Source: Paramoeba atlantica (taxonomy: Eukaryota > Protista > Discosea). From it: a stretch of DNA of 64,000 nucleotides. Shown here piece by piece: positions 21,858 to 53,655 of this stretch. How positions within the stretch are numbered: position 1 is the first letter of the stretch; each line of letters opens with the position of its first letter. Location of the stretch: assembly GCA_977017575.1 (NCBI GenBank), contig CDRNVI010000150.1:1-64000 (forward strand). The letters are read 5' to 3'. Under the pieces are notes generated by a model. That model was not told where the DNA came from. It did not search any database and saw only the letters and a program-made list of their open reading frames with translations. The position numbers and the translations under genes were made by a program.

Positions 21858-22173
21858 CTTCCCTCTTTCACCCAAAAAGACTTTTCTTTTTTAGAGCACT
21901 AAAATTTATTTGTGGTTTCTTATTTCTTAATCATTTTTCTCTTCTTGGATTCTCTTTTTCTCTTGTCCTTCTCTCTCCTTGTGAACAAATTGGCAACTTA
22001 TTCTTTATTGTTCGGTTTATTCCCTCTTCCCCTCTCCCCAAATAAAATAAACAATTTCTTTTTGAAAAAAAGAAGGTTTCCTTTTTCAATTTTGTGGAGG
22101 TTAATCCATTCGAGGTTTTTTGAATTCAATTTCATCATCACCAAAACCACATTCATCTCCAATCTTTCTCTTT

Positions 22174-25713: not shown

Positions 25714-27356
25714 TTACTTTCTCTTTCTTCTCCTTCTTCCCTTTGTTCTTCTCCTTCTTCTCTTTGTTCTTCTTTTCCATTTGATTCAATCTTTTCATTT
25801 ACATCTCGTTTTGCAGGTTTAATGGAACCATCAATGTGAATGTATTCCTATCCAAAAATTGTGTTTCAATTCTTTGGGAAATTCAACAATAATGAGAAAA
25901 AGAAAAAGAAAAACCTTAAAAAACTTCTTCACGCGTGGAGAGTAGGCAGAGTCTGCTGGTGTTTGTCCCTAAAATATTAAAAAATATTTAAAAAAGCTGA
26001 AAAAAAGAGATTCATCAAAAAAAGTGAATCAATAAATCAAAGAAGAACAGAGTTATTTTTGATTTCAGGATCAGCACCATATTCACACAAAAGTTTCACT
26101 ATCTCCAACTTACCCCCATGTGCAGCCAGATGGAGCGCAGTCCTCCCATCCTACCATTTTGGGTTGAATGAATTGTTCCCAAAGAGTACCCCAAAAACAA
26201 AGAAATGTGAAAAACCTCATTTGTTTTGTTGATTTCAACACCATTTTGTAACAAAAATAAAACAATCTCTTTGATTGTTGTATTTATTCCATAAATAGAA
26301 GTTTGGTTGAGGAGAGCCATGAGAGGAGTGCGACCCTTCAAAAAAAAAATGATTAAAAAATGACTCAAAAACACCCATTAAAAAAAAATCAAATTAGAAA
26401 ATACGTGATAGATTTCATTTACATCTGCTCCATTTTCAACTAAGATCTTAACAACTGGTAAATTAACAAACTTGGAAGCACAAACTTGATGAAGAACAGA
26501 ACTCTTTCCCTGTTTTTCCAAATTGATGGTAAATTGAAAGAAGAAAAAAAAGAAAGAAAGAAGAGAGAGGATTGTTTTGAGAAATAATTACTTTAAAAAA
26601 ATGGAAAGATAACTTGAAAAATCGATTTGATATGAGGAGAGAAAGAGAAAAAGAGAAAGAAAGAAAGAAAGAGAAACTGGCTTTGTTTGGTCCACTTTGA
26701 CTCCTTTTTCAATCAAAAATTTGGCAATTTCAAAGTCTCCTTTTTCACAAACTGAAGATAATGCAATCCTCTTTCGTGTTTGCTACATCAAATAAAAATA
26801 AACAAGAAATACTCAACAATCAAAAAATGAAAAAATATGATTAGAGAAAAAAAAGAGAGATGATTTACCGAAATTGGCTCAAGAGAAGAGCCTTTCTCAA
26901 AAAGAAATTGAACTATTTCAAGATTCCCAAATTCACAAGCAATAATCAATGGATTTGATCCATCCTTCAAAAACCATAACAACAGAGACAATCAAAATTT
27001 TTAAAATCTTTTTTTCAAAAAAAGAAAGAGGAAAAAAACCTCAGCAACAGGGCTCGCAAGTGAAGCACCATTTTCAATCAACAAAGTGATCATCTTTAAG
27101 TCTCCTTTTTCACAAGCTCTCATCAAAGGATTAATCCCTTCCTTTTCTCAAAACTTTCAGATCAATATCGCAACTCAACACACACACAGAGACAACAGAA
27201 TCATCACCAGAGAGGATGATGACAAAAAAAAGAAAAGAAGATGATCACCTGGTATCTTGGAGCTTGATTGACATCCACTCTCTGACTCAAAAGAAGTTGT
27301 TTAACTCTTTCATAATCTCCCCCTTCCACAGCTTCAAACAATTGGCGGTCTGTCAT
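25714..27356 (-). CDS. Ankyrin-repeat protein, copy F (exons 5-12 deleted, still in frame)
   Basis: Exons 1-4 join exons 13-17 through a hybrid intron (junction about 26580). I translated the nine remaining exons and found no stop or frameshift; TAA at 25714-25716. Confidence 0.78.
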
Positions 27357-27708
27357 TTCCCCTCTCTCTCTCTCTTTCTTTCTTTCTCTCTCTTTCTCTT
27401 CTCTCTTTTCTCTTTCACCAAAAATACTTGTCTTTTTTAGAGCACTAAAATTTAGCAGCTAAAATATTTTAGCTTTTTTGATTCTCTTTTTCTCTGTCCT
27501 TCTCTCTCTCTCCTTGTGATGAAATTGGCAACTTATTCTTTATTTTTCGGTTTATTCCCTCTTCCCCTCTCCCCAAATAAAATAAACAATTTCTTTTTTG
27601 AAAAAAGAAGATTTCCTTTTTCAATTTTGTGGAGGTTAATCCATTCGAGGTTTTTTGAATTCAATTTCATCACCACTAAAACCACATTCATCTCCAATCT
27701 TTCTCTTT

Positions 27709-30521
27709 TTACTTTCTCTTTCTTCTCCTTCTTCTCTTTGTTCTTCTCCTCCTTCTCTTTGTTCTTCTTTTCCATTTGATTCAATCTTTTCATTCCCTTC
27801 TTGTTTTGCAGGTTTAATTGAACCATCAATGTGAATGTATTCCTATCCAAAAATTGTGAAAAATTCTTTGCAAATTTCAAAAAGAATGAGAAAAAGAAAA
27901 AGAAAAACCTTCAAAAACTTCTTTACTTGTGGACAGTAGGCGGAGTCTGCTGGTGTTTGTCCCTAAAATATTAAATTAAAAAAGCTGAAAAAAAGAGATT
28001 CATCAAAAAAAGTGAAATCAAAGAAAAATGAACATAGTTATTTTTGATTTCAGGATCAGCACCATATTCACACAAAAGTTTCACTATCTCCAACATACCC
28101 TTTTGCGCAGCCAAATGAAGTGCAGTACTTCCATCCTACCATTTTGGATTGATTAATTGTTCCCAAAGAGTACCCCAAAAACAAAGAAATGTGAAAAACC
28201 TCATTTGTTTTGTTGATTTCAACACCCTTTTTCAACATAAATAAAACAATCTCGATTTCAGAATTCCAAGGTCTTTGATTGAGGAGAACCATGAGAGGAG
28301 TGCGACCCTTCAAAAAATGAACGATTAAAATGATACTCAAAAACACCCATTGAAAAAAATCAAAATAGAAAATATTGGTAGATTTCATTTACATCTGCTC
28401 CATTTTCAACTAAGATCTTAACGACTGGTAAAACAAAATAGGAATCGCAAACTTGATGAAGAATACTCTTTCCCTGTTTTCCCCAAAACCAAATTGATGG
28501 TAAATTGAAAGAAAAGAAAGAAAGAAGAGAGAGAATTGTTTTGAAGAAAGTTATCAAAAAAACCAACAAACTTGAACAACGAAATGTGCTCCATTTTGTG
28601 ATAATAATTCAACAATATCCAAATTCTTGTTTAGACATGCAATAGCCAGAGGTGATTGATCATTCTGTGGTAATGAAACTTTGTAAAAGACAAAGAGAAA
28701 AGAAATTTCAAAGTTTTTGAAAAAAGAAAAAGAAAAAGAAAAAGAAAAAAAGAGAATACAAATAGATTGTGAACTCCATTGATTGGACAATGTTTAGAAA
28801 TCAAAAATTGAGCCAAATCAAATTTCCCTTCTTTACTTGCAAAACATAAAGCTCCAACATTCAATTCCTGGTGTGTGGAAATAAAAAAAAAGGAAAAAAA
28901 GGGGGGTGGGAGTGAATTGTGAATCTTGTGTTGAAAACAGAAAAATTGTTCACAAATAATAAAAAATACCTCTTTCATATTCTCCAATAAATAAGAGATT
29001 ACATCCATGTTACCCCCTTCACATGCCAAGATAAGACCATCACTGTACCCAACTTGAAGTTGAGCACCATGTTTGGTGAAGAAAGAAACAATTTTAAGAT
29101 CTCCTATTCCACATGCAATGGAAAAAGGGGTTCTGTTATACTGTCACAATTTTGAGAGAGAAATTTTAAAATCAAATTTTTTTCATTTATCCAAATACAA
29201 TATCAAAAAGAGAAAACAGACATGATTTTCAAAATTGATTGAAGCACCTCTTTCCACCAATAAAGTAATAATATCAAAATGACCTAGCAGAGTTGCCTCA
29301 AACAAAGGTGTCCTCCCCTTTTTTTTTTCACAAAAGTTGATTTCAATAAATCATCAAAGAAATCTCAAACAAGAGAAAAGAAAAAAAGAAAAAACCCCAT
29401 TTCCTTGTTGATCAATCTGAAGATCTTCTATCTTCAAAAAAGTTTTGACAATCTCTAAATTCCCTTTTCGACAAGCGATGTGAAAGGGAGACAGTCCCTC
29501 CTAAAATGACAAAAGGACAAAATAGAATTCATAAATTCCTCTTTCTCCCCTCCCCGCTCCAACATAAATAAAAAAAGAGAGACATTCAAAAATAAAAACA
29601 TACTTTTGAAAGAATATTTGGCTGAGCACCCTTTTCAAGAAGGAAATGAACCATTTTGATATTATTCTCCAAAACTGCAATACATAAAGGACTCCAACTC
29701 TACCAAAAAGAGATGAAAATATTTAAGCAAACTTCTTTTTCAAAAACTTTGAAAGTTGAGAAAGAGAAAAAATAACAATGGGTGTGTAACAAAAAAAAAC
29801 ACTTCTTTGTAAAGAAAAGTTGATATTTGCGCCTTTGTTGATCAAAAATTGTGCCATTTCAAAATCCCCTCTTTTGCAAGCACGACACAAAGAAGTTTCT
29901 CCTTCCTGTCTCCCCCCCAAAAAATAAGAAGATTGGTAAAGATGAGTTTTGTTTTTGTGAAAACATTCAAAAAAACTGAAGAAAAAACTTTACATTTGTT
30001 GACCAATCTACCTTTGCTTTGTTATCAATCAAAAGATTTGCCATTTCAATATCTCCCCTTTCACAACAAATCCACAAAGGGCTTTTCCCCCCCTGTTCAA
30101 ACAAAATGATCATTCAAAAAAATGGAAACATGAATAACAGACAATCAATCCTCAAACTTTCTCTCTCCCAAAAAAAAAGACAAAAAAGAAAGAGAAAAAA
30201 ACTCAGCAGGAAGACTCTCAAGTGAAGCACCATTTTCAATCAACAAAGTAACCATCTTTAAGTCTCCTTTTTCACATGCTCTTATCAAAGAAGTAATCCC
30301 TTTCTTTCTCAAACTTTCAAATCAATATCACAACACACAAAGAGACAACAGAATCATCACCAGATATGAAGGTGATCATTCAAAAAAAAAGAAGAAAAGA
30401 AGAAGATGATCACCTGGCGTCTTGGAGCTTGATTGACATCAACTTTTTGATTCAAAAGAAGTTGTTTGGCCTTTTCATAATCCCCGTCTTCCACAGCATC
30501 AAATAATTGGTGATCTGCCAT
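27709..30521 (-). CDS. Ankyrin-repeat protein, copy G (exons 3-4 deleted; possible frameshift at exon-2 donor)
   Basis: ATG 30521 (MADHQLFDAVEDG), hybrid intron junction about 30135. The exon-2 donor reads GA|GT where paralogs read GAG|GT (about 30201), so G is either a pseudogene or carries a 1-bp error. Confidence 0.65.
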
Positions 30522-30893
30522 TCTCTCTCTCTCTCTTTCTCTCTCACCTCCTCCAAAAAAACACCAACAACAACCAAAAAAGAGAGAGAAAAAGATCGAA
30601 AATGGCAAGTTGCTCCTTTCTTTTGAGAAAACTAAATTTAGTCATTTTCATAATTTCCTCTTCTTTTTGATTTTCATTTTCTCTCTCTCTTTTGTCACAT
30701 TTATTTTTTATTTTTCTATTTTATTATTTTCCCCCTCTCCCCCCACCCCACCACCCCAAATAAAATAAACAATTTCTTTTTTGAAAAAGAAGATTTCCTT
30801 TTTCAATTTTGTGGAGGTAAATCCATTCAAGGTTTTTTGAATTCAATTTCATCACCACCAAAACCACCACATTCATCTCCAATCTTTCTCTTT

Positions 30894-31006
30894 TTACTTT
30901 CTCTTTCTACTTTCTCTTTCTTCTCTTTCTTCTCTTTCTTTTCTTTCTTCTCCTTCTTCTCTTTGTTCTTCTTTTCCATTTGATTCAATCTTTTCATTCC
31001 CATCTC
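30894..31006 (-). pseudogene. Last-exon remnant of an eighth ankyrin copy
   Basis: GGGAATGAAAAGATTGAATCAAATGGAAAAGAAGAACAAAGAG...AAGTAA plus the conserved 3' flank; homology stops abruptly at about 31008. Confidence 0.75.
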
Positions 31007-31009
31007 TTT

Positions 31010-32136
31010 TCAAATGACTCACTCACATTTGTTCAATACTCACCACCCCCCATGTTATTTCATTTATCTGCAACATCTTCGGATTCCTTTTGAAGAGACA
31101 CCCAAAATAAAAACTCCTTGTGATCCCCTTTCGTTTCGTTTCAGAATACTTGGCACCACCCAATCTGAGGAACCTTTTTTATCATCCCAGAGCTAAGCAA
31201 GTTTATCCGGCGCGCCTACTTCACTGTTGTGAACTGGAGCAAGACCAAATGGCCATTGGCCAGTGGGCATTGCTCCAGGTATTATTTGAATCATCAGGCA
31301 CAGGGTTTAATTTGGGTATTGGACAGGTACTTCTTTCCCTTCTCAGAAAATATCGATTGCATCTGGTCAATGACCATACACATCAATGTTTTCAACACTT
31401 AATTAATCTTTTCTTTTGAAGAAAGGGGACCCTTTTTTTTGAATTTCAGGAGGCAACAAAAAAACCACTGTTCACATATTTGAAGCTTCCTTTACCTCAA
31501 GAACAAATTTGTCTCTGGAACCAATTGTTGCCTCTTCAATATTGATAATAGATCGCAGTTCTTGAGAAAAGGGAATCCTCAAAAGGAATGAGTTGATCAA
31601 GAATGGGGTGAAGGACGGACCTCAAAGTTGTACCTCCCATCCTCCACCCATGTTTCATCACAATCTGTCTCTTCCAAAAATCTGTATCAAAGATATTTTC
31701 AAAGGAGAAGAAAAGATTGAAGTCCAAAAAAAGAAAAGATAAAACAGAAAGAAAGGAAACCTGATGTGACAGTACAGTCATTTTTCCTTCCTGAAGAAAA
31801 CGAAAAAAGAGACACGAGCAATAGTTTCTTCCAATCCAAGAAAATCTTATTTCTGTTGGAAGGCTTTCTTTCTCGCAATCTGGAATCCTCGAGGTCTTTT
31901 CCTTTCTCTAGTCCCTAAATTCAAGTTTCTGTGTTCCCTTTCCTCTTTTGAGGCTGGTCCTGATTGAAGAAGATTCGATTGTCCATCAAAAATTAATTCA
32001 AACCCTTTCTTTTTTGATTTTTCTCTGAAAATTTCAGCGGAAGAAGATAATCTCTGTCTTTACCTGATGAAGAAGAGGTCTCTCCCAACCCAATAGAAAT
32101 CCCCAGAACGAGAAACCGCTGAAGGAGAAGGACCAT
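31010..32136 (-). other. Unresolved unique sequence, possibly a degenerate or mis-assembled spliced gene
   Basis: Higher complexity than surrounding spacers. There is a candidate start MVLLLQRFLVLGISIGLGETSSSS|GTAAG at 32136 and several GT/AG signals, but I could not build a stop-free model. Confidence 0.3.
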
Positions 32137-32443
32137 CGAACAAAAAACTGAACAAACCCAAAAGGAAAAAGCGGAAAAAGCGGAAAAAATTAGCGCTCTA
32201 AAAAACGCATTTTCAAACGCATTTTTTCAAAAATCGAATTTTTTTAGGTTCCTCAAAAAATCTCTTTCCACTTCAAAAAATCTGACTCGGATTTTTTTAG
32301 GATTTACTAAGATCACCTCCTTCCCCCTCATTTGGTATCATTTAAAAGGTTCCCATTTTCTCGATTTTTTTTTTTGTTTTCTGGTTGTTGAGATTTGCGA
32401 ACACCGCCCCAATTTCTGTGGTTGTTGTTTGCTTGCTCGTTGA

Positions 32444-35400
32444 ATGAATTGTGTTTTTCTTTGTCAGGGGAGGAGTTCTTCTTCTCCTCCTTCTGGCTTT
32501 GCTTTTGATGGTGGCGGAGGTCAAAAACGGGGAAGAATATTCTCGTTTTTGGCTTTTGTCGTGGTGGTTGTTCTTCTGATTTCGCAAGGAGAGGGAGGTA
32601 TTTTGACCATCCAAGATAACAATCAAGATCAAGCCGCGCCAACCGCGGTCTTCTATTATCGAATTGAATCGAACGAGTCAATTCCCCAAGCGATCCTCAA
32701 TCTTCCAACTGGAAGTTGGTCTTTTCCAACGGAAGATGAACCTCTTTGTGTCTCCGATGATCCTGCTTCGTGTCCCATCACAGAGATCTCGATCACCAAT
32801 TGGTTTGTTTTTTAGATTTTTTTGTTTTTTGTTTTTCGTTTTTTTGTTTTTTTGTTTTTTTGTTTTATTCCTTTGAACAAAGCTGTTCTGTCCACCAAAA
32901 GATTTCGTGTTCATGAAAAACGTAATTATTCTCTTATCTTTTTTTTCAAAAAGGGATGACATTGAACAAGAATATTATCACCAATCGATTGAGTTTATCA
33001 CTCCATACGAAATGATTAATTTTTTGGGTTATGGTAAGTTTTTCTTTTGTGAAAAATACAATTTTTGTTCGGTTCTCAAAACAATTAATCTTCCTTTTTC
33101 CACAGTCCAATTTACTGGTGATCTCAGGAGTGTTAAAAATGACATTGGTGAGGATTTTTGATTATGAATACCTATTTTAAATATCTTGATCATTTTTTTG
33201 ATGTTTTTTTTTTAGAATCTCTTCGTTTAATGTATCGTAGTGGAACTGAAACAATCGGAGGGAATGAGTATGAAGGAAATGAAATTTCAGCAGGACCCGT
33301 CTATGTTACCGAAGATGGAATCCTTCGAAACAGTTGGGCTGTTACAACCGATCAAAGTTACGATTTCGATGAACCAGTTGAAGATTGTTCGACTTCTGCT
33401 CTTTGTCCCCTGAATACTCCAATCCCTTGTCTCCTGAATAAGGATTGTTCTGCGAACGAGTGTCCGTTGTTACCTCAATGGTGGGAAGAAGCCACTTTTT
33501 TCGATGAGTATGGGTGTTATGCTCGACAAGGAGCTGATTACAAAACTGACCCAGCCAGAGACGAAGCAGTGGTTGAAGCAATCACAGGAAGAAAACAATG
33601 TTGTTTGCCAGAGCTTCCCAATCAATTCCCAACTGAAGAGTATTATCCTTACAATAGTTATGGAGATACAAAGAAAGAAATCCCTTGTTCTTTGTTACCT
33701 TATTGTTCTGATGATGTATGGTCTGAAGATCCTTTTCATACAACGATGCCTGATGGAATGGATTATACATACTTTTATTTGGATAATGATGGTCGTATTT
33801 CGAATCTTGATCCATCAGATATTGTTGTTGAAGATGGAAGTGATTTTGTTCCTGACTTAAGAAGGAAGAAGTCTGCAATGTGTGATCCTGATATCTGGCC
33901 TCCTCGCCCTCGAAACGGACCTCGTTTGGATTTCTTCATTTCTGGGTATCGATCACTTACTGAAGAAGATTTACCTTTTCCAATCCAATGGGGAGGTACT
34001 GGTTCAAATACCATCGATGGTCTGAAACAAACAATGCAAATTGGAACAATTGGATTCAAAGACTATGTTTCTGATGATGATTGGAGTGTGAAAGCTCTTG
34101 GTTTGAATCATGGTGGAACTGGAGGAACAACAGCTGAAGAAGCACGCCAAAACCTCGTGTTGGGTCGATTAGCTCGTTTTGATACAATCGATGATTCCAA
34201 TTGGAATGGTCGTGCTCTTGGTTTGTTGAATGGTGGGACTGGAAGTCGAGAACAAGAAACTGCTCGTCGAAATTTAGGTCTTGGTCTCTCTTCTGTTGAA
34301 GGAATCGATTATGAAATTGAATTCAATCAACAAATTAGTGGTATTCAAGTGACTGTTGATGCTCTTGGTGCTCTTGCTTTTGAAGATACCATTCGGCCTG
34401 CACTTTGGAGTGGAGAGACCCTTCCTCTTGTTGATGGTGGTGTTGATGCCAGTAATGCGATGGATGCTCGTTACAATCTCCTTCTTGGTCAAATGGCTCT
34501 GTATGATTATATTGGAGATAATAATTGGATGGGACCTCCTCTTTCTGTTGCGAATGGAGGAACTGGTTCAACTTCTGTTGAAGAGATTGGTGATACTCTT
34601 GAACTTGGAGATTTAGCTTATCTCGATTATGCAACAGATTTTGTGTGGGGTGGGGATCCTTTAAGTATTGAAAATGGTGGAGTTGAAGCTACCAATGTTA
34701 TTGATTCTCGTTTCAATCTTCTTCTTGGAGCTCTTGCGACTTTTGATTATGTTGGAAATGAACAATGGTTAGGACCTCCTCTTTCCATTGAAAATGGAGG
34801 AACTGGTGCGAACACTCTCGAACAAGCTGTTGATAATTTCGAACTTGGTCAAATGGCTTTTGTGGATGGAGTTGCTGATTATCTTTGGTCTGGTGATTCT
34901 CTCACAATGGTCAATGGGGGTCTTGAAGCAAACAATGCGATTGATTCTCGTTTCAATCTTCTTCTTGGTCATTTGTCAACTCTCGATTATGTTGGGAATG
35001 AACAATGGCTTGGATCTCCTCTTTCGATTGAAAATGGAGGAACTGGAGCAAATACTTTCGAACAAGTTGTTGATAACTTTGAATTGGGAGAACTTGCCTT
35101 TTTGGATGTCGTTGGAGATTCATTATGGAGTGGTGATTCTCTTAGTATTGAAAATGGTGGGTTCGATGCATCCAATGTGATTGATGCTCGTTACAATCTT
35201 CTTCTTGGTTATTTATCAACTCTCGATGCTGTTGGAAATGACCAATGGCTTGGAGCTCCTCTTTCAATCGAAAATGGAGGAACTGGAGCCAACACTTTTG
35301 AAGAAGCTGTTGATAATTTCGAGTTGGGAGAACTTGCCTTTTTGGATGTTGTTAGAGATTCATTATGGAGTGGTGATTCTCTTAGTATCGAAAATGGAGG

Positions 35401-38400
35401 ACTTGAAGCATCCAATGTGATTGATTCTCGTTACAATCTTCTTCTTGGTGCTTTATCAACTCTCGATTATGTTGGAAACGAACAATGGCTTGGATCTCCT
35501 CTTTCAATCGAAAATGGAGGAACTGGAGCAAACACTTTCGAACAAGTTGTTGACAATTTCGAGTTGGGAGAACTTGCCTTTTTGGATGTTGTTAGAGATT
35601 CATTATGGAGTGGTGATTCTCTTAGTATTGAACATGGAGGACTTGAAGCATCCAATGTGATTGATTCTCGTTACAATCTTCTTCTTGGTCATTTATCAAC
35701 TCTCGATTATGTTGGAAACGAACAATGGCTTGGATCTCCTCTTTCAATCGAAAACGGAGGAACTGGAGCCAATACTTTCGAACAAGTTGTTGATAACTTT
35801 GAGTTGGGAGAACTTGCCTTTTTGGATGTTGTTAGAGATTCATTATGGAGTGGTGATTCTCTTGGTATTGAGAATGGTGGGTTTGAAGCATCCAATGTGA
35901 TTGATGCTCGTTACAATCTTCTTCTTGGTGCTTTGTCAACCCTCGATTATGTTGGGAATGAACAATGGCTTGGATCTCCTCTTTCGATTGAAAATGGAGG
36001 AACTGGAGCAAATACTTTCGAACAAGTTGTTGATAATTTTGAGTTGGGAGAACTTGCCTTTTTAGATGTTGTTGGGGACTCTTTATGGAGTGGTGATTCT
36101 CTTGGTCTTGAAAATGGAGGACTTGAAGCATCCAATGTGATTGATTCTCGTTACAATCTTCTTCTTGGTGCTTTATCAACTCTCGATTATGTTGGAAACG
36201 AACAATGGCTTGGATCTCCTCTTTCGATTGAAAATGGAGGAACTGGAGCAAATACTTTCGAACAAGTTGTTGATAATTTTGAGTTGGGAGAACTTGCCTT
36301 TTTGGATGTTGTTGGAGATTCACTGTGGAGTGGTGATTCTCTTAGTATTGAAAATGGTGGGTTTGAAGCGAGTAATGTGATTGATGCTCGTTACAATCTT
36401 CTTCTTGGTGCTTTATCAACTCTCGATTATGTTGGAAACGAACAATGGCTTGGATCTCCTCTTTCAATCGAAAACGGAGGAACTGGAGCAAATACTTTCG
36501 AACAAGTTGTTGATAATTTTGAGTTGGGAGAACTTGCCTTTTTGGATGTTGTTGGAGATTCATTATGGAGTGGTGATTCTCTTGGTATTGAAAATGGTGG
36601 TTTTGAAGCATCCAATGTGATTGATGCTCGATATAATCTTCTTCTTGGTGCTTTATCAACTCTCGATTATGTTGGAAATGAACAATGGCTTGGATCTCCT
36701 CTTTCGATTGAAAACGGAGGAACTGGAGCCAATACTTTCGAACAAGTTGTTGATAATTTTGAGTTGGGAGAACTTGCCTTTTTGGATGTTATTGGAGATT
36801 CTTTATGGAGTGGTGACCCTTTAACTTTCGAAAATGGAGGACTTGAAGCAAACAATGTGATTGATTCTCGTTACAATCTTCTTCTTGGTGCTTTATCAAC
36901 TCTCGATTATGTTGGAAACGAACAATGGCTTGGATCTCCTCTTTCCATTGAAAATGGAGGAACTGGAGCAAATACTTTCGAACAAGTTGTTGATAACTTT
37001 GAGTTGGGAGAACTTGCCTTTTTGGATGTTGTTGGAGATTCATTATGGAGTGGTGATTCTCTTAGTATTGAAAATGGTGGGTTTGAAGCATCCAATGTGA
37101 TTGATGCTCGTTACAATCTTCTTCTTGGTTATTTATCAACTCTTGATTTTGTCGGAAATGACCAATGGCTTGGAGCTCCTCTCTCCATTGAAAACGGAGG
37201 AACTGGAGCCAATACTTTCGAAGAAGCTGTTGATAATTTTGAGTTGGGAGAACTTGCCTTTTTGGATGTTGTTAGAGATTCATTGTGGAGTGGTGATTCT
37301 CTTAGTATCGAAAATGGTGGGTTTGAAGCATCTAATGTGATTGATGCTCGTTACAATTTGAATCTTGGATATCTTTCAACCTACGATTATCTCGGAGATA
37401 ACCTTTGGATTGGTCCTCCTCTTTCAGTGGACAATGGAGGAACTGGAGTGACCACTTATTATGATCTCACAGATCGACTTGAACTTGGAGATTTGGCTTA
37501 CTTAGATTATGTTATGGATTTCTATTATGGTGGTGATCCACTCTCAATCGAAAATGGTGGTTTTGAAGCTTCCAACATTCTTGATGCTCGTTACAATCTT
37601 AATCTTGGATATCTTGCAACATATGATTATCTTGGGGATAACCTTTGGATTGGTCCTCCTTTGGGAGTCAACAATGGAGGAACTGGAGTGACCTCTTATT
37701 ATGATTTGACTGATGCTCTTGAACTTGGAGAGTTGGCTTATTTGGATTATGTGATGGATTATTATTATGGTGGTGATCCACTCTCAATCGAAAATGGTGG
37801 TTTTGAAGCTTCCAATGTTCTTGATGCTCGTTACAATTTGAATCTTGGATATCTCTCAACTTACGATTATCTTGGAGATAACCTTTGGATTGGTCCTCCT
37901 TTGGGTGTTAACAATGGAGGAACTGGAGTGACCTCTTATTATGATTTAACTGATGCTCTTGAACTTGGAGAGTTGGCTTACATGGATTATGTGATGGATT
38001 ATTATTATGGTGGTGATTCTCTTAGTATCGAAAACGGTGGTTTTGAAGCTTCCAATGTTCTTGATGCTCGTTACAATTTGAATCTTGGATATCTCTCAAC
38101 TTACGATTACCTTGGGGATAACCTTTGGATTGGCCCTCCTTTGGGTGTTAATAACGGAGGAACTGGAGTGACAACCTATTATGATTTAACTGATGAACTT
38201 GAACTTGGAGAGTTGGCTTACATGGATTATGTGATGGATTTCTATTATGGTGGTGAACCACTCTCAATCGAAAATGGTGGTTTTGAAGCTTCTAATATTC
38301 TTGATGCTCGTTACAATCTTAATCTTGGGTATCTCTCGACCTACGATTACCTTGGAGATAACCTTTGGATTGGTCCTCCTTTGGGTGTTAACAATGGAGG

Positions 38401-41400
38401 AACTGGAGTGACAACCTATTATGAGTTAACTGATGTTCTTGAACTTGGAGATTTAGCTTATTTAGATTATGTAATGGATTTCTATTACAGTGGTGATCCT
38501 CTTTCGATCAAAAATGGGGGTTTTGAAGCTTCCAACATTCTTGATGCTCGTTACAATTTGAATCTTGGATACCTCTCAACTTACGATTACATTGGGGATA
38601 ACCTTTGGATTGGTCCTCCTTTGGGTGTTGATAATGGAGGAACTGGTGTTTCTTCTTATTATGATTTAACTGATGTTCTTGAACTTGGAGATTTGGCTTA
38701 TTTGGATTATGTGATGGATTTCTATTATGGTGGTGAACCACTTTCAATCGAAAATGGTGGGTTTGAAGCTTCGAATGTTCTTGATGCTCGTTACAATTTG
38801 AATCTTGGGTATCTCTCGACCTTTGATTACATTGGAGATAACCTTTGGATTGGTCCTCCATTAGGAGTTAACAATGGAGGAACTGGAGTGACAACCTATT
38901 ATGAGTTAACTGATGCTCTTGAACTTGGAGAATTGGCTTATTTGGATTATGTGATGGATTACTATTATGGCGGTGAACCCCTCTCAGTCGAGAATGGTGG
39001 TCTTGAAGCTCCCAATGTTATCGATGCTCGTTACAATCTTAATCTTGGATATCTCTCAACATTTGATTACATTGGAGATAATCTTTGGATTGGTCCTCCT
39101 TTGGATGTCGATAATGGAGGAACTGGAGTGACCACTTATTATGAGTTGACTGATGTTCTTGAACTCGGAGATTTAGCTTATTTGGATTATGTAATGGATT
39201 TCTATTATGGTGGTGATGAACTTTCTATTGTGAATGGTGGAACTCAAGCAACTGATGTTCTTGATGTTCGTTACAATCTTAATCTTGGATATCTCTCAAC
39301 TTACGATTACATTGGAAATAACCTTTGGATTGGTCCTCCTTTGAGCACCAACAATGGAGGAACTGGAGTTTCTTCTTATTATGATTTAACTGACGAACTT
39401 GAACTTGGAGAGTTAGCTTATTTGGATTATGTGATGGATTTCTATTACAGTGGTGAAGATTTATCTCGATACAATGGAGGAACTGAAGCTTCTAATGTTA
39501 TTGATGCTCGTTACAATCTTAATCTTGGATATCTCTCGACTTACGACTACATTGGAAATAATCTTTGGATTGGTCCTCCTTTAGGTGTTGATAATGGAGG
39601 AACTGGAGTTTCTTCTTATTATGAGTTAACTGACGAACTGGAACTTGGAGAGTTAGCTTACTTAGATTATGTAATGGATTATTATTATGGTGGAGACGAA
39701 CTTTCTATTGTGAATGGTGGAACCCAAGCAACCAATGTTCTTGATGTTCGTTACAATCTTAATCTTGGGTATCTCTCAACTTACGATTACATTGGAAATA
39801 ATCTTTGGATTGGTCCTCCTTTGGGTGTTGATAATGGAGGAACTGGTGTTTCTTCTTATTATGAGTTGACTGACGAACTTGAACTTGGAGAGTTAGCTTA
39901 CTTAGATTATGTGATGGATTATTATTATGGTGGAGACGAACTCTCAATTGTAAATGGTGGAACCCAAGCAACCAATGTTCTTGATGTTCGTTACAATCTT
40001 AATCTTGGATATCTCTCAACCTATGACTACATTGGAAATAACCTTTGGATTGGTCCTCCTCTTTCAGTGGACAATGGAGGGACTGGAGTTTCTTCTTATT
40101 ATGATTTAACTGATGTTCTTGAACTTGGAGAGTTGGCTTACTTAGATTATGTGATGGATTATTATTATGGTGGAGACGAACTTTCCATTGTGAATGGTGG
40201 AACTCAAGCAACCAATGTTCTTGATGTTCGTTACAATTTGAATCTTGGATATCTCTCAACTTACGATTATCTTGGGGATAACCTTTGGATTGGTCCTCCT
40301 TTGGGTATCAACAATGGAGGAACTGGAGTGACCAATTATTATGATTTAACTGATGCTCTTGAACTTGGGGAGTTAGCTTATTTGGATTATGTGATGGATT
40401 TCTATTACAGTGGTGAAGATTTGTCTCGATACAATGGAGGAACTGAAGCTTCTAATGTTCTTGATGCTCGTTACAATCTTAATCTTGGATATCTTTCGAC
40501 TTACGACTACATTGGAAATAACCTTTGGATTGGTCCTCCTTTAGGTGTTGATAATGGAGGAACTGGAGTTTCTTCTTATTATGAGTTAACTGACGAACTG
40601 GAACTTGGAGAGTTAGCTTACTTAGATTATGTGATGGATTATTATTATGGTGGAGATGAACTTTCTATTGTGAATGGTGGGACCCAAGCAACCAATGTTC
40701 TTGATGTTCGTTACAATTTGAATCTTGGATATCTCTCGACCTATGATTATATTGGAGATAATCTTTGGATTGGTCCTCCTCTTTCAGTGGACAATGGAGG
40801 AACTGGTGTTTCTTCTTATTATGAGTTAACCGACGAACTGGAACTTGGAGAGTTAGCTTACTTAGATTATGTGATGGATTATTATTATGGTGGAGACGAA
40901 CTTTCTATTGTAAATGGTGGAACCCAAGCAACCAATGTTCTTGATGTTCGTTACAATTTGAATCTTGGATATCTCTCAACATATGATTACATTGGAGATA
41001 ATCTCTGGATTGGTCCTCCTTTGGGTATCAACAATGGAGGAACTGGAGTGACCAATTATTATGATTTAACTGACGAACTTGAACTTGGAGAGTTGGCTTA
41101 TTTGGATTATGTGATGGATTTCTATTACAGTGGTGAAGATTTATCTCGATACAATGGAGGAACTGAAGCTTCTAATGTTCTTGATGCTCGTTACAATCTT
41201 AATCTTGGGTATCTCTCAACGTTTGATTACATTGGAAATAATCTTTGGATTGGTCCTCCTTTAGGTGTTGATAATGGAGGAACTGGAGTTTCTTCTTATT
41301 ATGAGTTGACTGACGAACTTGAACTTGGAGAGTTAGCTTATTTGGATTATGTAATGGATTATTATTATGGTGGAGACGAACTCTCAATTGTGAATGGAGG

Positions 41401-43090
41401 AACTCAAGCAACCAATGTTCTTGATGTTCGTTACAATCTTAATCTTGGATATCTCGCAACCTTTGATTACCTTGGGGATAATCTTTGGATTGGCCCTCCT
41501 TTGGATGTCGATAACGGAGGAACTGGAGTGACCTCTTATTATGAGTTAACTGATGTTCTTGAACTTGGAGAATTAGCTTACTTAGATTATGTGATGGATT
41601 ATTATTATGGTGGAGACGAACTCTCAATTGTAAATGGTGGAACCCAAGCAACCAATGTTCTTGATGTTCGTTACAATCTCAATCTTGGATATCTCTCGAC
41701 TTATGATTACATTGGAGATGATCTTTGGATTGGTCCTCCTTTGGGCATCAACAATGGAGGAACTGGAGTGACCAATTATTATGATTTAACTGACGCTCTT
41801 GAACTTGGGGAGTTAGCTTATTTGGATTATGTGATGGATTTCTATTACAGTGGTGAAGATTTATCTCGATACAATGGAGGAACTGAAGCTTCTAATGTTC
41901 TTGATGCTCGTTACAATCTTAATCTTGGGTATCTCTCAACCTTTGATTACATTGGAGATAACCTTTGGATTGGTCCTCCTTTGGATGTTAGCAATGGAGG
42001 AACTGGAGTTTCTTCTTATTATGAGTTAACTGATGCTCTTGAACTTGGAGAGTTAGCTTACTTAGATTATGTGATGGATTATTATTATGGTGGAGACGAA
42101 CTTTCCATTGTGAATGGTGGAACTCAAGCAACCAATGTTCTTGATGTTCGATACAATCTTAATCTTGGATATCTCTCGACTTACGATTACATTGGAGATA
42201 ATCTTTGGATTGGTCCTCCTTTGGGCATCAACAATGGAGGAACTGGAGTGACCAATTATTATGATTTAACTGATGCTCTTGAACTTGGAGAGTTAGCTTA
42301 TTTAGATTATGTGATGGATTATTATTATGGTGGTGATGAACTTTCTCTTGTGAATGGTGGAACCCAAGCAACCAATGTTCTTGATGTTCGGTACAATCTT
42401 AATCTTGGATATCTCTCGACCTCTGATTATATTGGAGATGATCTTTGGATTGGTCCTCCTTTGGGCATCAACAATGGGGGAACTGGAGTGAGTACTTATT
42501 ATGAGTTAACTGATGTTCTTGAACTTGGAGAGTTGGCTTATTTGGATTATGTGATGGATTATTATTATGGTGGTGATGAACTCTCAATGTTCAATGGTGG
42601 AACTGATGCTACGAAAGCAGTGGATCGAAGATATACCGCGCTTTTGGGACATCTCGCCACAGAAGATTATCTTTCGAATGATCTTTGGATTGGAACACCT
42701 CTCTCTGTGATGAATGGTGGAACTGGTGCTTCAACTCCATCAGAAGCTCAAGAGAATCTTTACATTGGATCAGTTGGGTTGTTGTGGTCTCTTGATAATG
42801 CTCATTGGAATTCTGGGCCACTTTCAATCGAAAATGGTGGGTCTGCTGGTTCTGATCTGACCGAAGCAAGAGAAAATTTGGGAGTCAGTTTATTAGGTTT
42901 CAATAATGAAGTGAGTGATTTGATTTGGGATTATTATGGTCCTCCTCTTGGAGTTGAGAATGGAGGAACAGGTGCGGAGGATTTGCAATTGGGATGGAAG
43001 AATCTGGGTCTCTTTACAGAAGGTTTTATGGATCTATTTTGTGATATGTGGTTTGAGTATTATGAAGTTGATCTTTGTGATAATTCGTAG
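32444..43090 (+). CDS. Giant (~3,450 aa) acidic repeat protein with N-terminal hydrophobic signal/anchor, Cys-rich region and tail-fibre-like 40-aa repeats
   Basis: Proposed exons 32444-32802, 32954-33033, 33106-33147 and 33216-43090 total 10,356 nt and splice in frame at GT-AG sites (TNW|DDIEQ, GY|VQF, NDI|ESLRLM). The hydrophobic stretch IFSFLAFVVVVVLLISQGEG lies near the N-terminus; TAG at 43088-43090. Confidence 0.85.
33985..43010 (+). repeat. Coding tandem array: 120-bp subunits paired into 240-bp units
   Basis: GG-AACTGG (GGTG) recurs every 240 nt with no indel from 34561 to 42721. Consensus L[AS]xxDxxxxxx[WY]xGxxLxxxNGGxxAxxxxx[A/V]RxNLxLG. Confidence 0.97.
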
Positions 43091-43453: not shown

Positions 43454-46400
43454 ATGAAGAGAGTTCGAAGAAAGACTCTTCCTTCGAGCCCAATTTCTGT
43501 TCCATTGGTGAGCTGTTTTCCCTTTGATTCCTTTTTCGTTTTTTCCCCTTGAGATGTTCGATCATTGACAGCCTTTTTCTTTTTAGGAGGGTTGTTCTGA
43601 GAATTCTGATTTATCCATTGATGATGAAGTTGGAGAACTGAAGGATTTGAAATCCACAAAAAAGAAAGGGAGAAAATCTCTCATCAGTAGTAAAACTCCC
43701 CCTTCGAGAAAAAGTGAATATTCTGTCCCTGTCGAAGCGACACGTTCTTGGGTAACTTTTTCTCTTCTCTCTTTTTCACTCTTTTTTTCATTCTTTTTTC
43801 ACTTTTTTGCTCTTTTTTCTCATTTAACTTTCACAAAGGAAAAAGAATATACGAATCCACTTACTTCTCCAAAACCTCTCCAACCAAGAGAGAAATTCGA
43901 TCTCGATCAAAAGAGCGGAGAAAAGAAAAGAACAAGCTCCCTGTCGCATCATTTTCCCAAAAAGTTTCCTTCACGCCACGAAGAACAAGAAGAAACTCAA
44001 ATCTGCTCTTCTCGTTCTCGCTCTTCTCGTTCTCGCTCTCCTCCTTGTACATCTCCTTCTCGTACATCTCGAGAATCAAAGTCAGCTCGTCCTTCAAGTT
44101 CACGCCACTCTTTGATGTTTACTTCTCCTCTTATCCGATCTGATCCTCGTTCTTCTTCGACCCCCCGTTGCACATCTCCTCTTTCTTCTCAACCAGAATC
44201 TGTTCAATCTCCTCGTTCTTCACGTTCACGCCACTCTGTTATGAGCCCTACTCCTTTCACCCAATCTGATCAAAGTTCTTTTCCTCGTTCTCCTTCTTGC
44301 ACACCTCCTCATTCCAAAACAAAGTCTGTGAATCAATCTCCTCATTTTTCTTCACGTTCACGCCACTCTTTTATGATCCCTTCTCCTTTTACTACTTCTG
44401 ATTGTCCTTCTTCTTCTTCTTCAAGTCCACTTGTAGCTCTTTCTCCTCGTTTGAAATCTTTTTTTTCACCTCAAGGAGATTCTCCTCCTCCCTTTTCTCC
44501 TTCTCTCTCTTTTTCTGAATCAGACGAGTGTCAATTTCGTTGTGATTCTTATTTGGAGATTGTTAATTATTTGGTTAGTTTGACTTCAGAGAAAATCGAG
44601 TTTTTTTTTATTGGTTTTGAACAATCTTTTGATATTGATCAGGTTTTTTTCTTCTCTTTTCTCTTTTCCTTTCTCTCTTTCATTCCCTCCCTCTCTTTCT
44701 CTTTTCTCTTTTTATTGAACGATTCCAATTGATCAAAATCAAAAAATAGTTTAAACTTTTGGAAACAATGAAAGAGATGATGACCACAAAAGAAGGAGAG
44801 GAACAACAAACTGAGAAGAAAGAACAAATTATTCAAATTGTTCTTTCTTGGAGAAAATCATTAACACCGTTTTATCAAACTTTTAATCCCCTTTTATCCA
44901 AGTTCTATTCTTTTCTTCTTTCTTTCTTTCATTCTTTTCTCTTTGGATTGACTTGTTGTAAAAATAGAGCAATTGAAGAATTTCTCGATTCTTTGGAATC
45001 AACCCCTTTCGGATCAACTTTGGTCCTTTTTTTTCTTCTTTTTTTTCTCTTCTTTTTTTTATGCCTTTATTTCAAATATTTAAAACACACTATTTTTCTG
45101 TTGGATTGGATAAACTTTTGGATACGAACCTCCCTATCTCCTGAGATCCTGAGCTCCTGAGATCCTGAGATTCTGAGATTCTGAGATTATTCATCAGATC
45201 CTTTTTTGCTAATGTTGAAAAAAATAGATTTGGAAAGGGAGAATGAGTTTGAGTTCTTGTGGAACGAGTCATCATGTTGCACAAATGTTAACTTCCATGA
45301 TGTTTCAAAGATACAAATATTTACGATCTGATGAGTTTTTTGATGGTTTTTGGGAGGTTTTCCTTTTTTTTTCTTTTCCTTTGACGTTTTCTTTCTTTGA
45401 CTCTTTTAAATGAACTCTTTTTACAAATAGAAAAAAGAGAAATATATTCGATCACCAAATATTATGGCAATGAGCGAAATATTCAATCGAATTTCATCAA
45501 TGGTTGTTGAATCAATCCTATTTTGTGAGTCTGAAACTCGTTCTCAGAATTTAATGTTTATGATTAAACTTGCAACCAAACTTTTCAAGGTTTTTCTTCT
45601 CTCTCTTTTTCTTTGTTTCTTCTTTCGTTTATTTCTCTCCTTTCTCTTCTTTCAATTTACTGAGTTTTCCTCTTTTTTTACAAGCTCCGAAATTTTGAGG
45701 GATGGGGGGCTGTAATAAGTGGAATGAATCAATCTTCAATTCAACGTTTAAAACCATTGTGGAAACATCTCAATTCGAAGGTTTTGTTTTTTCTTTTTCT
45801 ATTTTTTTGTTTGTGAATTTAAATTGTTGAAATATTGATGAAAACAAAAATAGTACAAAAAGAGATTTAAGTTGTTTGATGAAATGTTATCTCCTGAAGC
45901 GAATTTTAAAAACTATCAAAATTTGTTACATTCTTCAGAACCACCTCTTCTTCCTTGGTTTGCTCCAAAGGTTCTCTTTCTTTTTTTTTTGAATATTCTT
46001 TTTCTTTTTATTTTCAAAACCAACTGATGATTTGAACAGTTGAGGGAGTTAAGATATTTGTACGATGGGAATCAAGCAAAAACAGAAGAAGGATATGTTA
46101 ATTTACCTTATCTCATGGTTTCTTTTTCATTTTTTTGTTTTTTTTGTAATTTCGTCTTGAAAAAGGACTGAACAAAAGTAACAAAAACAGAAAATTGGAT
46201 CATCAATCAAATCGTTTTTACAATATCAACAATTTCAGTACGATTTTCCCCATTCTCCTGACACTGCGTTGTTGTTGAAATTTTTTCAAAAACGTTCAGT
46301 TTCTGAGGTTTTTTTCTCTTTCAAAATATTCTCTTTTCTTCTCTTTCTCTCTTCTCTTGACTCACATTTTTTGTTTTTTATGTTTAGGAAATTTGTTACA

Positions 46401-52836: not shown

Positions 52837-53085
52837 TTCTTTTTGGCCTTATCGAACCAATCCTGAAGTTCACTGAAGAGAAAGCGCAAAGGTCTCAAAC
52901 AAAAGAGGAGGAGCTTCTGAAGAAGGAAATGTGAGGAAAACAAAAAACCACCCAAAAGAAAAACCAACAAACCAATGAGAATCCAAAAAAAAGAGAAAGA
53001 GACAAAAGAGAAACACAAAACAAAGAAAACGGCAAGTTCCCATAGAATTCCTATAAATCTAAAAAAAAGAAAACTTTTCAACCGA

Positions 53086-53157
53086 TCCCTTGTGGTGTAG
53101 TCGGTAACACGGTCGGCTTTCACCCGGCCACCCCGGGTTCGATTCCCGGCAAGGGAG
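53086..53157 (+). tRNA. tRNA-Glu (TTC)
   Basis: Acceptor stem TCCCTTG/CAAGGGA, D stem GTGT/ACAC, anticodon arm GTCGG-CTTTCAC-CCGGC, T arm CCGGG-TTCGATT-CCCGG, poly-T terminator downstream. Confidence 0.96.
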
Positions 53158-53583
53158 CTTACTTTTTTTTTTTTTTTTTCTTTTTCCTTTCAATTTTTTT
53201 TTTTTTTTTTTTTTTTCTTTTTTTTTTCTCAATTTTTTCTTTTTTGGTTTCAATGAATTCTCATTCAAAAACTTTTTCTTGCAATTTGAAATTGGTTTTT
53301 TTTCAAATTGAAAAGTTTTTTGTTTTTTGTGAACAACCAAAATTATTTCTCAGTTTTCCCAGTTTTCTTTTTTGTTTGGTTTTTTTTTGTTCTTTTTTGA
53401 AAAAGTGTCCAGCCTTTCAAAACTTTTGGAATGGAGCTTGAAAAATTATTTTTTTTGGAAGCAAAAAAAATTGTTCTTTCAGTCAAAATCAAAAAATCAC
53501 ATCGCCAAACCATTCTTCAAGTTTGAAAAATGAAACTCAACACAAATTCTTGTCATTCTAAAAAAAAAAAACTTTTCAACCGA

Positions 53584-53655
53584 TCCCTTGTGGTGTAGTC
53601 GGTAACACGGTCGGCTTTCACCCGGCCACCCCGGGTTCGATTCCCGGCAAGGGAG
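53584..53655 (+). tRNA. tRNA-Glu (TTC)
   Basis: Identical to the 53086 copy. Confidence 0.96.

What the first reader, a model, noticed from the sequence alone, without database searches (positions are those of the whole stretch)
32444..43090. Eukaryotic giant exported protein built from about 70-75 phage-tail-fibre-like repeats
Seen: the spliced gene has an N-terminal signal/anchor and a Cys-rich head, then about 3,000 aa of 40-aa repeats. The terminal repeats read LGLNHGGTGGTTAEEARQNLVLG, LGLLNGGTGSREQETARRNLGLG and LSVMNGGTGASTPSEAQENL. From recall, not a search: L.V.NGGTGA....ARxNLGLG recurs in bacteriophage and viral tail-fibre proteins, which are trimeric fibres. Inference: a viral or prokaryotic fibre module was captured, given a host secretion signal and 5' introns, and amplified into a long surface filament (coat, adhesin, prey-capture fibre or decoy). 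I do not recognise this as a described eukaryotic family, and it is the best candidate for a new system here.
Basis: partly seen in the sequence, partly recalled or inferred. Interest (0 to 1): 0.9.

Follow-up and report, generated by a model that had tools for sequence, protein, structure and literature searches.

The report
Giant eukaryotic protein of phage-fibre repeats
A eukaryotic genome encodes a 3,451-residue, probably secreted protein built from 75 copies of a 40-residue repeat otherwise found in phage tail fibres and bacterial surface proteins, so it looks like a borrowed viral or bacterial fibre module expanded into a very long filament.

Summary
Window 33158-43090 (+) is one open frame of 3,310 codons. 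It holds 74 units of exactly 40 residues plus one degenerate unit, in alternating A and B types. A model with three GT-AG introns joins it in frame to an upstream exon carrying a hydrophobic signal or anchor.

Homology to phage fibres is solid:
- PHROG tail-fibre families match, with E down to 4e-26.
- 617 cluster representatives match. They carry the same 40-residue period in only 2-9 copies, and one sits in an SU10-like phage tail module.
- A profile hits the SU10 long tail fibre at 1e-11.
- All significant Foldseek hits in BFVD are caudoviral fibre proteins.

The gene looks host-adapted:
- GC3 is 0.23-0.26, against 0.19-0.21 in neighbouring host genes.
- dN/dS between repeat copies is 0.15-0.22.
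- A separate assembly confirms the join to the upstream flank.

No Pfam or NCBIfam family covers the repeat, and no named eukaryotic relative was found. The N-terminal head has no detectable relatives.

Still open:
- Trimeric state, surface location and function are inferred.
- The donor could be a phage or a bacterium.

Best reading: a horizontally acquired fibre-shaft repeat, amplified in the host into an acidic extracellular filament. The scan did not report this on other DNA.

The parts
32444..32802 (+). Predicted exon 1: start codon, 30-residue N-region ending KRGR, hydrophobic segment (nt 32534-32581), start of the Cys-containing head
   Evidence: ORF 32444-32815. Hydropathy peak 2.19 at residues 31-49. 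Donor TTG|GTTTGT. No PHROG match.
32803..32953 (+). Predicted intron 1 (151 nt, GT..AG, T-rich).
32954..33033 (+). Predicted exon 2 (80 nt)
   Evidence: In frame in the joined model. Donor ATG|GTAAGT.
33034..33105 (+). Predicted intron 2 (72 nt)
   Evidence: GTAAGT...CCACAG.
33106..33147 (+). Predicted exon 3 (42 nt)
   Evidence: In frame. Donor TTG|GTGAGG.
33148..33215 (+). Predicted intron 3 (68 nt)
   Evidence: GTGAGG...TTTTTTTTTTAG.
33216..33970 (+). Exon 4, head part: Cys-rich, acidic, no detectable relatives
   Evidence: No hit other than itself among 1.84 billion representatives. No Pfam, PHROG or NCBIfam family. Atlas best score 0.69. AF2 pLDDT 33.
33971..34654 (+). Degenerate unit 0 and diverged units 1-4. 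Units 1 and 2 keep the canonical GGTG...AR.NLGLG motif, and unit 2 carries a 28-residue insert
   Evidence: Unit 1 scores E 1e-17 against an HMM built only from prokaryotic and phage units.
34655..37294 (+). Zone 1: units 5-26, i.e. 11 A/B superunits of 240 nt, 78-96% identical in DNA
   Evidence: dN/dS 0.22, dS 0.30.
37295..39214 (+). Zone 2: units 27-42, with Tyr-rich B units
   Evidence: dN/dS 0.15, dS 0.45.
39215..42574 (+). Zone 3: units 43-70, with a higher-order period of three superunits (720 nt). Copies at that spacing are 92-98% identical
   Evidence: dN/dS 0.17.
42575..43090 (+). Diverged terminal units 71-74, a short tail with two Cys, and the TAG stop (43088-43090). No C-terminal tip or chaperone domain
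   Evidence: tblastn with the C-terminal domains of P0002 and P0003 found nothing in the window.

Best explanation
This is a host-encoded eukaryotic gene whose product is about 377 kDa. It has an N-terminal signal peptide or signal anchor, then a roughly 400-residue Cys-containing head with no detectable relatives, then 75 tandem 40-residue units. The unit is homologous to the shaft repeat of phage long tail fibres and of bacterial surface proteins (consensus ..LSvaNGGTGAs.a..AR.NLGLG.lat......nW.G). The module was acquired horizontally from a phage or bacterium. An A/B pair of units was then amplified in the host by unequal crossing-over from the usual 2-9 copies to 75. The gene took on host codon usage and, if the model is right, host introns and a secretion signal. 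By analogy with phage fibres, which are trimers, the protein probably forms a rigid, very acidic rod of the order of 0.1 micrometre. The rod would be held at or released from the cell surface by its N-terminal end, serving as a structural or adhesive filament. Shown: the architecture, the homology, the host context, and purifying selection. Inferred: splicing, export, trimer formation, length and function.
For: Architecture.

Homology:
- PHROG tail-fibre families match, 5481 at E 3.9e-26 and 12321 at 1.8e-16.
- 617 representatives have E<1e-3 and 149 have E<1e-10. The exact 40-residue period is their commonest spacing.
- Each of the 74 units scores E 2e-7 to 1e-18 against an HMM built from 180 non-window units.
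- Profile A1 hits SU10 long-tail-fibre protein 7z47_D at 1e-11 and the R1 pyocin fibre at 0.039.
- Relative P0007 lies just downstream of the SU10_portal and SU10_adaptor genes.
- 59 IMG/VR loci encode relatives.
- There are 12 BFVD Foldseek hits with E<=1e-3, all from tailed phages and most of the named ones fibre-type proteins.
- Relatives co-carry Peptidase_S74, Mtd_N and other fibre domains.

Host ownership:
- GC3 is 0.23-0.26 against 0.19-0.21 in neighbouring NHL genes, with the same avoided codons.
- ENA contig L003 matches window 30165-34763 at 99.9%.
- Flanking genes have short introns of the same style.

Selection: dN/dS is 0.15-0.22 with dS 0.30-0.45 between copies, and there are no indels.

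The AF2 model of 5 units has pLDDT 85 and is extended.

The SU10 fibre is a trimer, and its 786-residue gp12 forms a segment of 300-400 A (PMC9509320).
Against: - Run X1, guessed to be RNA, has only 17 million letters and holds 0.29 of the words. Low-coverage DNA would give that as well.
- The hydrophobic segment has only about 15 residues and follows a long N-region, so cleaved signal versus anchor is open.
- The protein lacks both the virion-attachment N-terminus and the C-terminal tip or intramolecular-chaperone domain of phage fibres. How it would trimerise or bind anything is therefore unknown.
- No solved structure resembles the model: Foldseek PDB E about 3, VIA-align no Z>=2.
- TM-scores to the phage models are low.
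- RSCU correlation with host genes is only 0.59-0.75.
- No orthologue or paralogue was found, so conservation across species is unknown.
Confidence: 0.6

Rival explanations
1. The big ORF is a separate gene without exons 1-3. Its mRNA would begin at the AG at 33215, for instance by spliced-leader addition, and translation would start at the Met of MYRSG near 33229. The product would have no signal peptide and would be an intracellular fibre, for example a thread of an ejectile organelle or a cytoskeletal rod. The upstream 123-codon ORF would then be an unrelated small membrane protein.
For: The T-rich tract plus AG before 33216 is also what a trans-splice acceptor looks like, and an in-frame ATG follows within 15 nt. 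Other first-stage notes on this genome report a spliced leader. These notes are unchecked. There is no RNA evidence for the three introns.
Against: Three consecutive GT-AG introns with good donors (GTAAGT, GTGAGG) keep the frame through two short exons. The exon 1 ORF ends only four codons past the proposed donor. Exon 1 continues in the Cys-containing, acidic style of the head. Neighbouring genes do use short cis-introns. There is only one N-x-S/T sequon in 3,451 residues, which fits a protein that passes through the secretory pathway, though repeats inflate this signal.
Confidence: 0.2
2. The gene arrived through a giant virus or other eukaryotic virus insertion, not directly from a phage or bacterium, and may still be part of an endogenous viral element.
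For: The donor is unresolved, and no relative is closer than 34-52% identity per stretch. The closest relatives, P0002 and P0003, are of unknown origin.
Against: The flanks are host repeats and TRIM-NHL genes, not viral genes. The one large viral contig checked (286 kb, L012) carries phage-type tail-fibre and head proteins. All significant BFVD hits are from tailed phages.
Confidence: 0.07
3. Contamination or a chimeric assembly: a phage or bacterial gene wrongly joined to eukaryotic DNA.
For: The repeat is otherwise prokaryotic or phage. The second assembly stops inside the array at 34763.
Against: G+C is 38% and GC3 0.23, with host-like codon choice. 75 copies compare with at most about 9 in tandem in prokaryotic or phage hits. 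The head is found nowhere else. An independent contig spans the upstream flank, the 5' exons and the first repeats.
Confidence: 0.02
4. A decaying or non-functional expanded coding repeat that is no longer used as a protein.
For: There is no expression evidence. Arrays of this kind expand by unequal crossing-over whatever their function.
Against: 9.9 kb has no stop codon and no indel across 74 units. dN/dS is 0.15-0.22 while dS reaches 0.45.
Confidence: 0.03

Closest known systems
Phage long tail fibre proteins with the 40-residue GGTG...NLGLG repeat (PHROG 5481, 21510, 12321, 1591; e.g. Escherichia phage SU10 gp12, PDB 7Z47 chain D)
   Same: Same repeat motif and the same exact 40-residue period. 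Profile E 1e-11 to SU10 gp12. 3Di similarity to many caudoviral fibre models.
   Different: Phage proteins have 2-9 units. They carry a virion-attachment N-terminus and a receptor-binding or chaperone C-terminus, and they are encoded in tail modules. The window protein has 75 units in alternating A and B forms, a head with no detectable relatives and a eukaryotic-style signal, and no tip domain. It sits among eukaryotic genes.
Bacterial chromosomal giant surface proteins carrying the repeat (e.g. P0011, 2,923 aa, next to gyrB and FG-GAP giants; P0017, named an FN3 domain protein of a Planctomycetes MAG)
   Same: N-terminal signal, very large size, and the same repeat used outside a virion.
   Different: The repeats come in short blocks of 1-2 units interspersed with other sequence, not as one uninterrupted array. 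Context and composition are bacterial.
Metagenomic proteins P0002 (2,120 aa) and P0003 (795 aa)
   Same: These are the best-scoring relatives (E 8e-112 and 6e-68). Both have an N-terminal hydrophobic signal followed by arrays of about 40-residue units. P0003 units keep the W.G...NGGTG form at 46% identity.
   Different: They share a C-terminal phage-like domain with each other (E 2e-33; phrog_34132; weak Peptidase_G2) plus a coiled coil. The window gene lacks this domain. Their heads are unrelated to the window head. Their organisms are unknown: one lies on a contig of about 60% G+C with a Myb-domain neighbour, the other on a 2.5-kb single-ORF contig.
R-type pyocin fibres (PDB 6CL5, 6CL6, 6CT8)
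   Same: One copy of the GG.GA....AR.N.G.G motif. They are the only PDB chains that Foldseek lists.
   Different: The matches are not significant (E 0.039 by profile, about 3 by fold). There is no 40-residue array.
MYRF-type reuse of a phage tailspike chaperone domain in animals (from my own knowledge, not tested here)
   Same: A precedent for a phage fibre or spike part working inside a eukaryotic membrane-bound protein.
   Different: That case involves the Peptidase_S74 self-cleaving domain, which the window protein lacks. It does not involve a shaft repeat or an amplified array.

Membership tests
Prokaryotic/phage 40-residue fibre repeat (PHROG 5481-type; SU10 gp12-type) | Motif L.v.NGGTGA..a..AR.NLGLG followed by ....W.G, repeated every 40 residues | tested here: met
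   74 units at exactly 40 residues. Each unit scores E 2e-7 to 1e-18 against an HMM of 180 non-window units. A units have lost TG and B units have lost AR.NLGLG, but both still match.
Prokaryotic/phage 40-residue fibre repeat (PHROG 5481-type; SU10 gp12-type) | Significant profile similarity to annotated tail-fibre families or solved fibre proteins | tested here: met
   phrog_5481 at E 3.9e-26. 7z47_D at E 1e-11. 12 BFVD hits with E<=1e-3.
Phage tail fibre protein (as a functional class) | Encoded in a phage tail or baseplate gene module | tested here: not met
   The flanks are host repeats, an intron-containing gene and TRIM-NHL genes. Compare relative P0007, which lies in an SU10-like module.
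Phage tail fibre protein (as a functional class) | N-terminal virion-attachment domain and C-terminal receptor-binding tip or intramolecular chaperone | tested here: not met
   The head and tail have no Pfam, PHROG or NCBIfam match. No Peptidase_S74 or G2-like domain is present in the window.
Phage tail fibre protein (as a functional class) | Homotrimeric fibre | not testable with these tools
   Only a monomer model could be made (pLDDT 85, pTM 0.35). The repeat part of SU10 gp12 is unresolved.
P0002/P0003 subfamily of secreted repeat proteins | Shared C-terminal phrog_34132-like domain plus coiled coil | tested here: not met
   tblastn of both C-termini against the window gave only repeat matches. 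The gene ends 25 residues after the last unit.
Eukaryotic secretory-pathway protein | N-terminal signal peptide or signal anchor on the mature mRNA | tested here: inconclusive
   A hydrophobic segment follows KRGR in exon 1. Joining exon 1 to the array rests on an unverified splice model, and no signal-peptide predictor or reads were available.
Horizontally acquired gene resident in a eukaryotic genome | Prokaryotic or viral relatives only, plus host-like composition, host flanks and introns | tested here: met
   No named eukaryotic relative. GC3 and codon choice are host-like. The flank join is confirmed by a second assembly. The introns are predicted only.

The most novel reading that the evidence does not exclude
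A eukaryote has domesticated the shaft repeat of phage or bacterial fibres to build a new kind of extracellular filament: a trimeric, highly acidic, Tyr-rich rod more than 100 nm long, used as a surface hair, coat or prey-capture fibre. P0002 and P0003 would then show that a wider, undescribed family of such secreted fibre proteins exists in other microbial eukaryotes.
Probability: 0.35. Interest if true: 0.8.

Novelty: new variant of a known kind. Interest (0 to 1): 0.62.

Why it matters
Structural genes moving from phages or bacteria into eukaryotes are rare compared with metabolic ones. Here a fibre-shaft module seems to have been taken over, given host gene features, and expanded roughly ten-fold beyond anything seen in its prokaryotic relatives, while staying under purifying selection. 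If the protein is made and exported, three things follow:
- It would be a new building block for eukaryotic surface filaments.
- It would be a natural experiment on how long such a fibre repeat can be extended.
- It would be a handle for finding the structure it forms in this poorly sampled organism.

The repeat itself is abundant, with more than 600 sequence clusters, yet it has no Pfam or NCBIfam model and no solved structure. It deserves a family definition.

Tried and rejected
Transcription and splicing could not be tested. After that, no letters of 32807-32873 went to any database, pattern, paper or findings search. Local scripts did read the whole window file for self-comparison and for aligning contig L003.
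- Pfam and NCBIfam gave no credible family for the head, repeats or tail.
- phmmer of single pieces against PDB was blank or marginal. Only the profile worked.
- Foldseek against PDB and AFDB clusters gave weak, low-TM matches. VIA-align wide gave nothing with Z>=2.
- The head, folded without an alignment, gave pLDDT 33 and was unusable. The Atlas features search of the head was uninformative.
- The word-indexed protein search with a 700-residue piece found only the protein itself and P0003.
- Host identity: the TRIM-NHL search showed more than 100 paralogues, but the nearest named proteins are only about 35% identical. The lineage stays unknown. Other readers' 'kinetoplastid' label was not verified and sits badly with the frequent short cis-introns seen here.
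- P0177 and P0189 turned out to be read-through gene calls from paralogous loci, useless for intron positions.
- I did not attempt a donor phylogeny of 40-residue units, because they are too short to resolve one.
- Paper searches found no description of such a eukaryotic protein.
Full report
**What is there**

Window 33158-43090 (+) is a single open frame of 3,310 codons. From residue 312 of that frame onward, a [N/D/H]GG motif recurs 74 times. Seventy-one of the spacings are exactly 40 residues, one is 68 (an insert in unit 2) and the last is 42. One more degenerate unit precedes them. The units alternate between two forms:
- The A form keeps the helix-like ...DARYNL.LG half but reads NGG[F/L/V]EA.
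- The B form keeps NGGTG but has replaced AR.NLGLG by ...LELG.

The true period is therefore 80 residues, or 240 nt, which is what Tandem Repeats Finder reports.

**Gene model**

Joining 32444-32802, 32954-33033, 33106-33147 and 33216-43090 gives an uninterrupted coding sequence of 10,356 nt and a protein of 3,451 residues. The introns are GT-AG, 151, 72 and 68 nt long, with donors GTTTGT, GTAAGT and GTGAGG.

Exon 1 encodes a 30-residue N-region ending in KRGR, then a hydrophobic stretch of about 15 residues followed by SQGEGG. This could be a cleaved signal or a signal anchor. The following roughly 400-residue head has 13 cysteines.

The whole protein is about 377 kDa and extremely acidic: 542 D+E against 87 K+R. 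It has 8.3% Tyr and carries only one N-x-S/T sequon.

The stop at 43088-43090 is followed by an A-rich stretch. The next gene starts near 43455 and has a short intron of its own.

Local scripts read the window file as a whole for self-comparison only.

The one run guessed to be RNA (X1) has 17 million letters and holds 0.29 of the sampled words. A low-coverage DNA library would give that equally well. Transcription is therefore open.

**Is the repeat really the phage one?**

Yes, on sequence evidence.
- Pieces of the array match PHROG tail-fibre families: phrog_5481 at E 3.9e-26, phrog_12321 at 1.8e-16, and phrog_6578, 1591 and 10316 at about 1e-11 to 1e-13.
- An exhaustive HMMER search of 1.84 billion cluster representatives found 617 proteins at E<=1e-3 and 149 at E<=1e-10.
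- In those proteins the commonest spacing of the GG[T]G motif is again exactly 40 residues, usually in runs of 2-5 and at most about 9.
- An HMM built from 180 units of those proteins alone has the consensus TDLSVANGGTGASDAAGARTNLGLGSLATLSTVNNSNWSG. It recognises every one of the 74 window units, with E between 2e-7 and 1e-18.
- A profile of 78 segments hits the 786-residue long-tail-fibre protein of phage SU10 (7z47_D) at 1e-11, and the R1 pyocin fibre weakly at 0.039.
- Relative P0007 lies directly downstream of SU10_portal and SU10_adaptor genes in a 59-kb record.
- 59 IMG/VR loci encode relatives. The one on a 286-kb viral contig is a phage-type fibre.
- Relatives found with P0003 co-carry Peptidase_S74, Mtd_N and other fibre domains. 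Where named, they are called tail fibre proteins of Caudoviricetes or hypothetical proteins of bacteria.

Structure adds only modest support.
- AlphaFold2 on five units with that alignment gives pLDDT 85 and pTM 0.35. The model is an extended chain in which each unit has one seven-residue helix and one or two short helical turns.
- Foldseek against BFVD gives 12 hits at E<=1e-3, all from tailed phages and most of the named ones fibre-type (phage Tls S74 protein, Salmonella and Pantoea phage tail fibres, Mtd-N proteins). TM-scores are low, as expected for flexible rods.
- Against solved structures the only listed chains are pyocin fibres, at E about 3. VIA-align finds nothing with Z>=2.
- In the SU10 entry only the first 90 residues of gp12 were built (PMC9509320). 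The repeat therefore has no experimental structure.
- Pfam and NCBIfam have no model for the repeat.

**Not only phages**

P0011 (2,923 aa) is a chromosomal bacterial protein, lying beside gyrB and FG-GAP giants. Many hits begin with bacterial signal peptides. The donor may therefore have been a bacterium as easily as a phage.

**Is it the host's gene?**

- G+C at third codon positions is 0.23-0.26, against 0.19-0.21 in the neighbouring TRIM-NHL genes. The same codons (CTA, GGC, AGC, GAC) are avoided. RSCU correlation is 0.59-0.75.
- An independent ENA contig (8,634 nt) matches window 30165-34763 at 99.9%. It thus joins the upstream flank, the 5' exons and the first repeats. It ends inside the array.
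- The flanks are eukaryotic. Upstream lies a 23-kb block of dispersed repeats. Downstream lie an intron-containing gene and a cluster of RING/B-box/NHL genes.
- In one of these genes that I checked, the RING exon and the B-box exon lie in different frames, separated by about 100 nt of CT-rich spacer. This indicates a short cis-intron in a neighbouring host gene.
- That family has more than 100 paralogues in an ENA assembly, but the nearest named proteins are only about 35% identical. The host lineage is poorly sampled and I could not name it.
- Other first-stage notes call the genome kinetoplastid-like with a spliced leader. I did not verify that, and frequent short cis-introns fit it poorly.

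**Evolution of the array**

The 240-nt superunits fall into three zones, 34655-37294, 37295-39214 and 39215-42574, flanked by diverged end units.
- Within zones, DNA identity is 78-98%. Between zone 1 and the other two it is about 60-72%.
- Zone 3 has a three-superunit (720-nt) higher order.
- Within zones, dS is 0.30-0.45 and dN/dS is 0.15-0.22.

The copies are therefore not very recent, yet the protein sequence and the exact unit length have been conserved. The end units keep the canonical motif best. This fits internal amplification of one A/B pair.

**Relatives with a similar build**

The two best hits are P0002 (2,120 aa) and P0003 (795 aa).
- P0002 has a signal peptide and about 45 loose units. 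It lies on a contig of about 60% G+C next to a Myb-domain gene.
- P0003 has a hydrophobic N-terminus and nine units at 46% identity. It lies on a 2.5-kb single-ORF contig.

Both end in a shared domain (E 2e-33) that matches phrog_34132 and weakly matches Peptidase_G2, followed by a coiled coil. The window gene has no such domain, and its head has no relative anywhere. They may be eukaryotic, but that is not shown.

**How it most likely works**

By homology the units should pack as a three-chain rod. If packing resembled SU10 gp12 (786 residues forming a segment of 300-400 A), 2,999 residues would give roughly 115-150 nm. This is a rough inference.

The N-terminus would sit at or near the membrane, or the protein would be released, with the Cys-rich head available for disulphide cross-linking or binding. 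This mirrors the phage arrangement, in which the N-terminus is the attached end. Lacking a tip domain, the rod itself, very negative and Tyr-rich, would be the functional surface: a hair, coat or sticky fibre.

My estimates:
- about 0.85 that this is a host-resident, selected gene of prokaryotic or phage repeat origin;
- about 0.6-0.65 that exons 1-3 belong to it and it is exported;
- about 0.5 that it forms a trimeric filament outside the cell.

The main rival is an intracellular product that starts at the Met near 33229.

**Novelty**

The repeat and horizontal transfer into eukaryotes are each known kinds of thing. An uninterrupted 75-unit array with a eukaryotic front end is a new variant. 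I found no paper or named protein describing it. The scan had not reported it on other DNA.

Noticed in passing
window 8100-31010: Directly upstream of the gene lies a 23-kb block of multi-kb repeats 84-90% identical to each other (e.g. 21271-24600 against 26825-30134 at 87%). It is A-rich on the + strand and has only short ORFs without Pfam matches.
   Followed up: partly
window 50681-64000: Cluster of RING/B-box/NHL genes. In the gene I checked, the RING exon (frame -2) and the B-box/NHL exon (frame -3) are separated by about 100 nt of CT-rich spacer, which indicates a short cis-intron. The family has more than 100 paralogues at 50-87% identity in an ENA assembly, but the nearest named proteins (TRIM71-like) are only about 35% identical.
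   Followed up: partly
L001:4636-10998 (P0002) and L002:3-2390 (P0003): Two metagenomic proteins with N-terminal signals, arrays of the same 40-residue repeat, and a shared phage-like C-terminal domain (phrog_34132, weak Peptidase_G2) plus a coiled coil. They may be a eukaryotic family of secreted fibre proteins, but their origin was not established.
   Followed up: partly
L064:8001-16772 (P0011): A 2,923-residue bacterial chromosomal protein carries the repeat in short blocks. It sits beside gyrB and two FG-GAP giant proteins. The 'phage' repeat is therefore also used in cellular surface proteins.
   Followed up: no
repeat family as a whole: This 40-residue repeat has more than 600 cluster representatives, but no Pfam or NCBIfam model and no solved structure. 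In PDB 7Z47 the repeat part of SU10 gp12 is unresolved.
   Followed up: partly
window 32444-43090 (protein): There is only one N-x-S/T sequon in 3,451 residues despite 7.9% Asn and 12% Ser+Thr. Net charge is about -455 and Tyr is 8.3%, clustered as YYYGG in the B units of zones 2 and 3.
   Followed up: no
window 43455-43600: The next gene downstream starts at an ATG near 43455 and has a short GTGAGC...TTTTTAG intron of the same style as the introns predicted for the fibre gene.
   Followed up: no
run X1: The only run labelled 'RNA?' has 17 million letters and holds 0.29 of the words of 32300-34300. That is what about 0.3x genomic coverage would give, so it should not be read as evidence of expression.
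   Followed up: no
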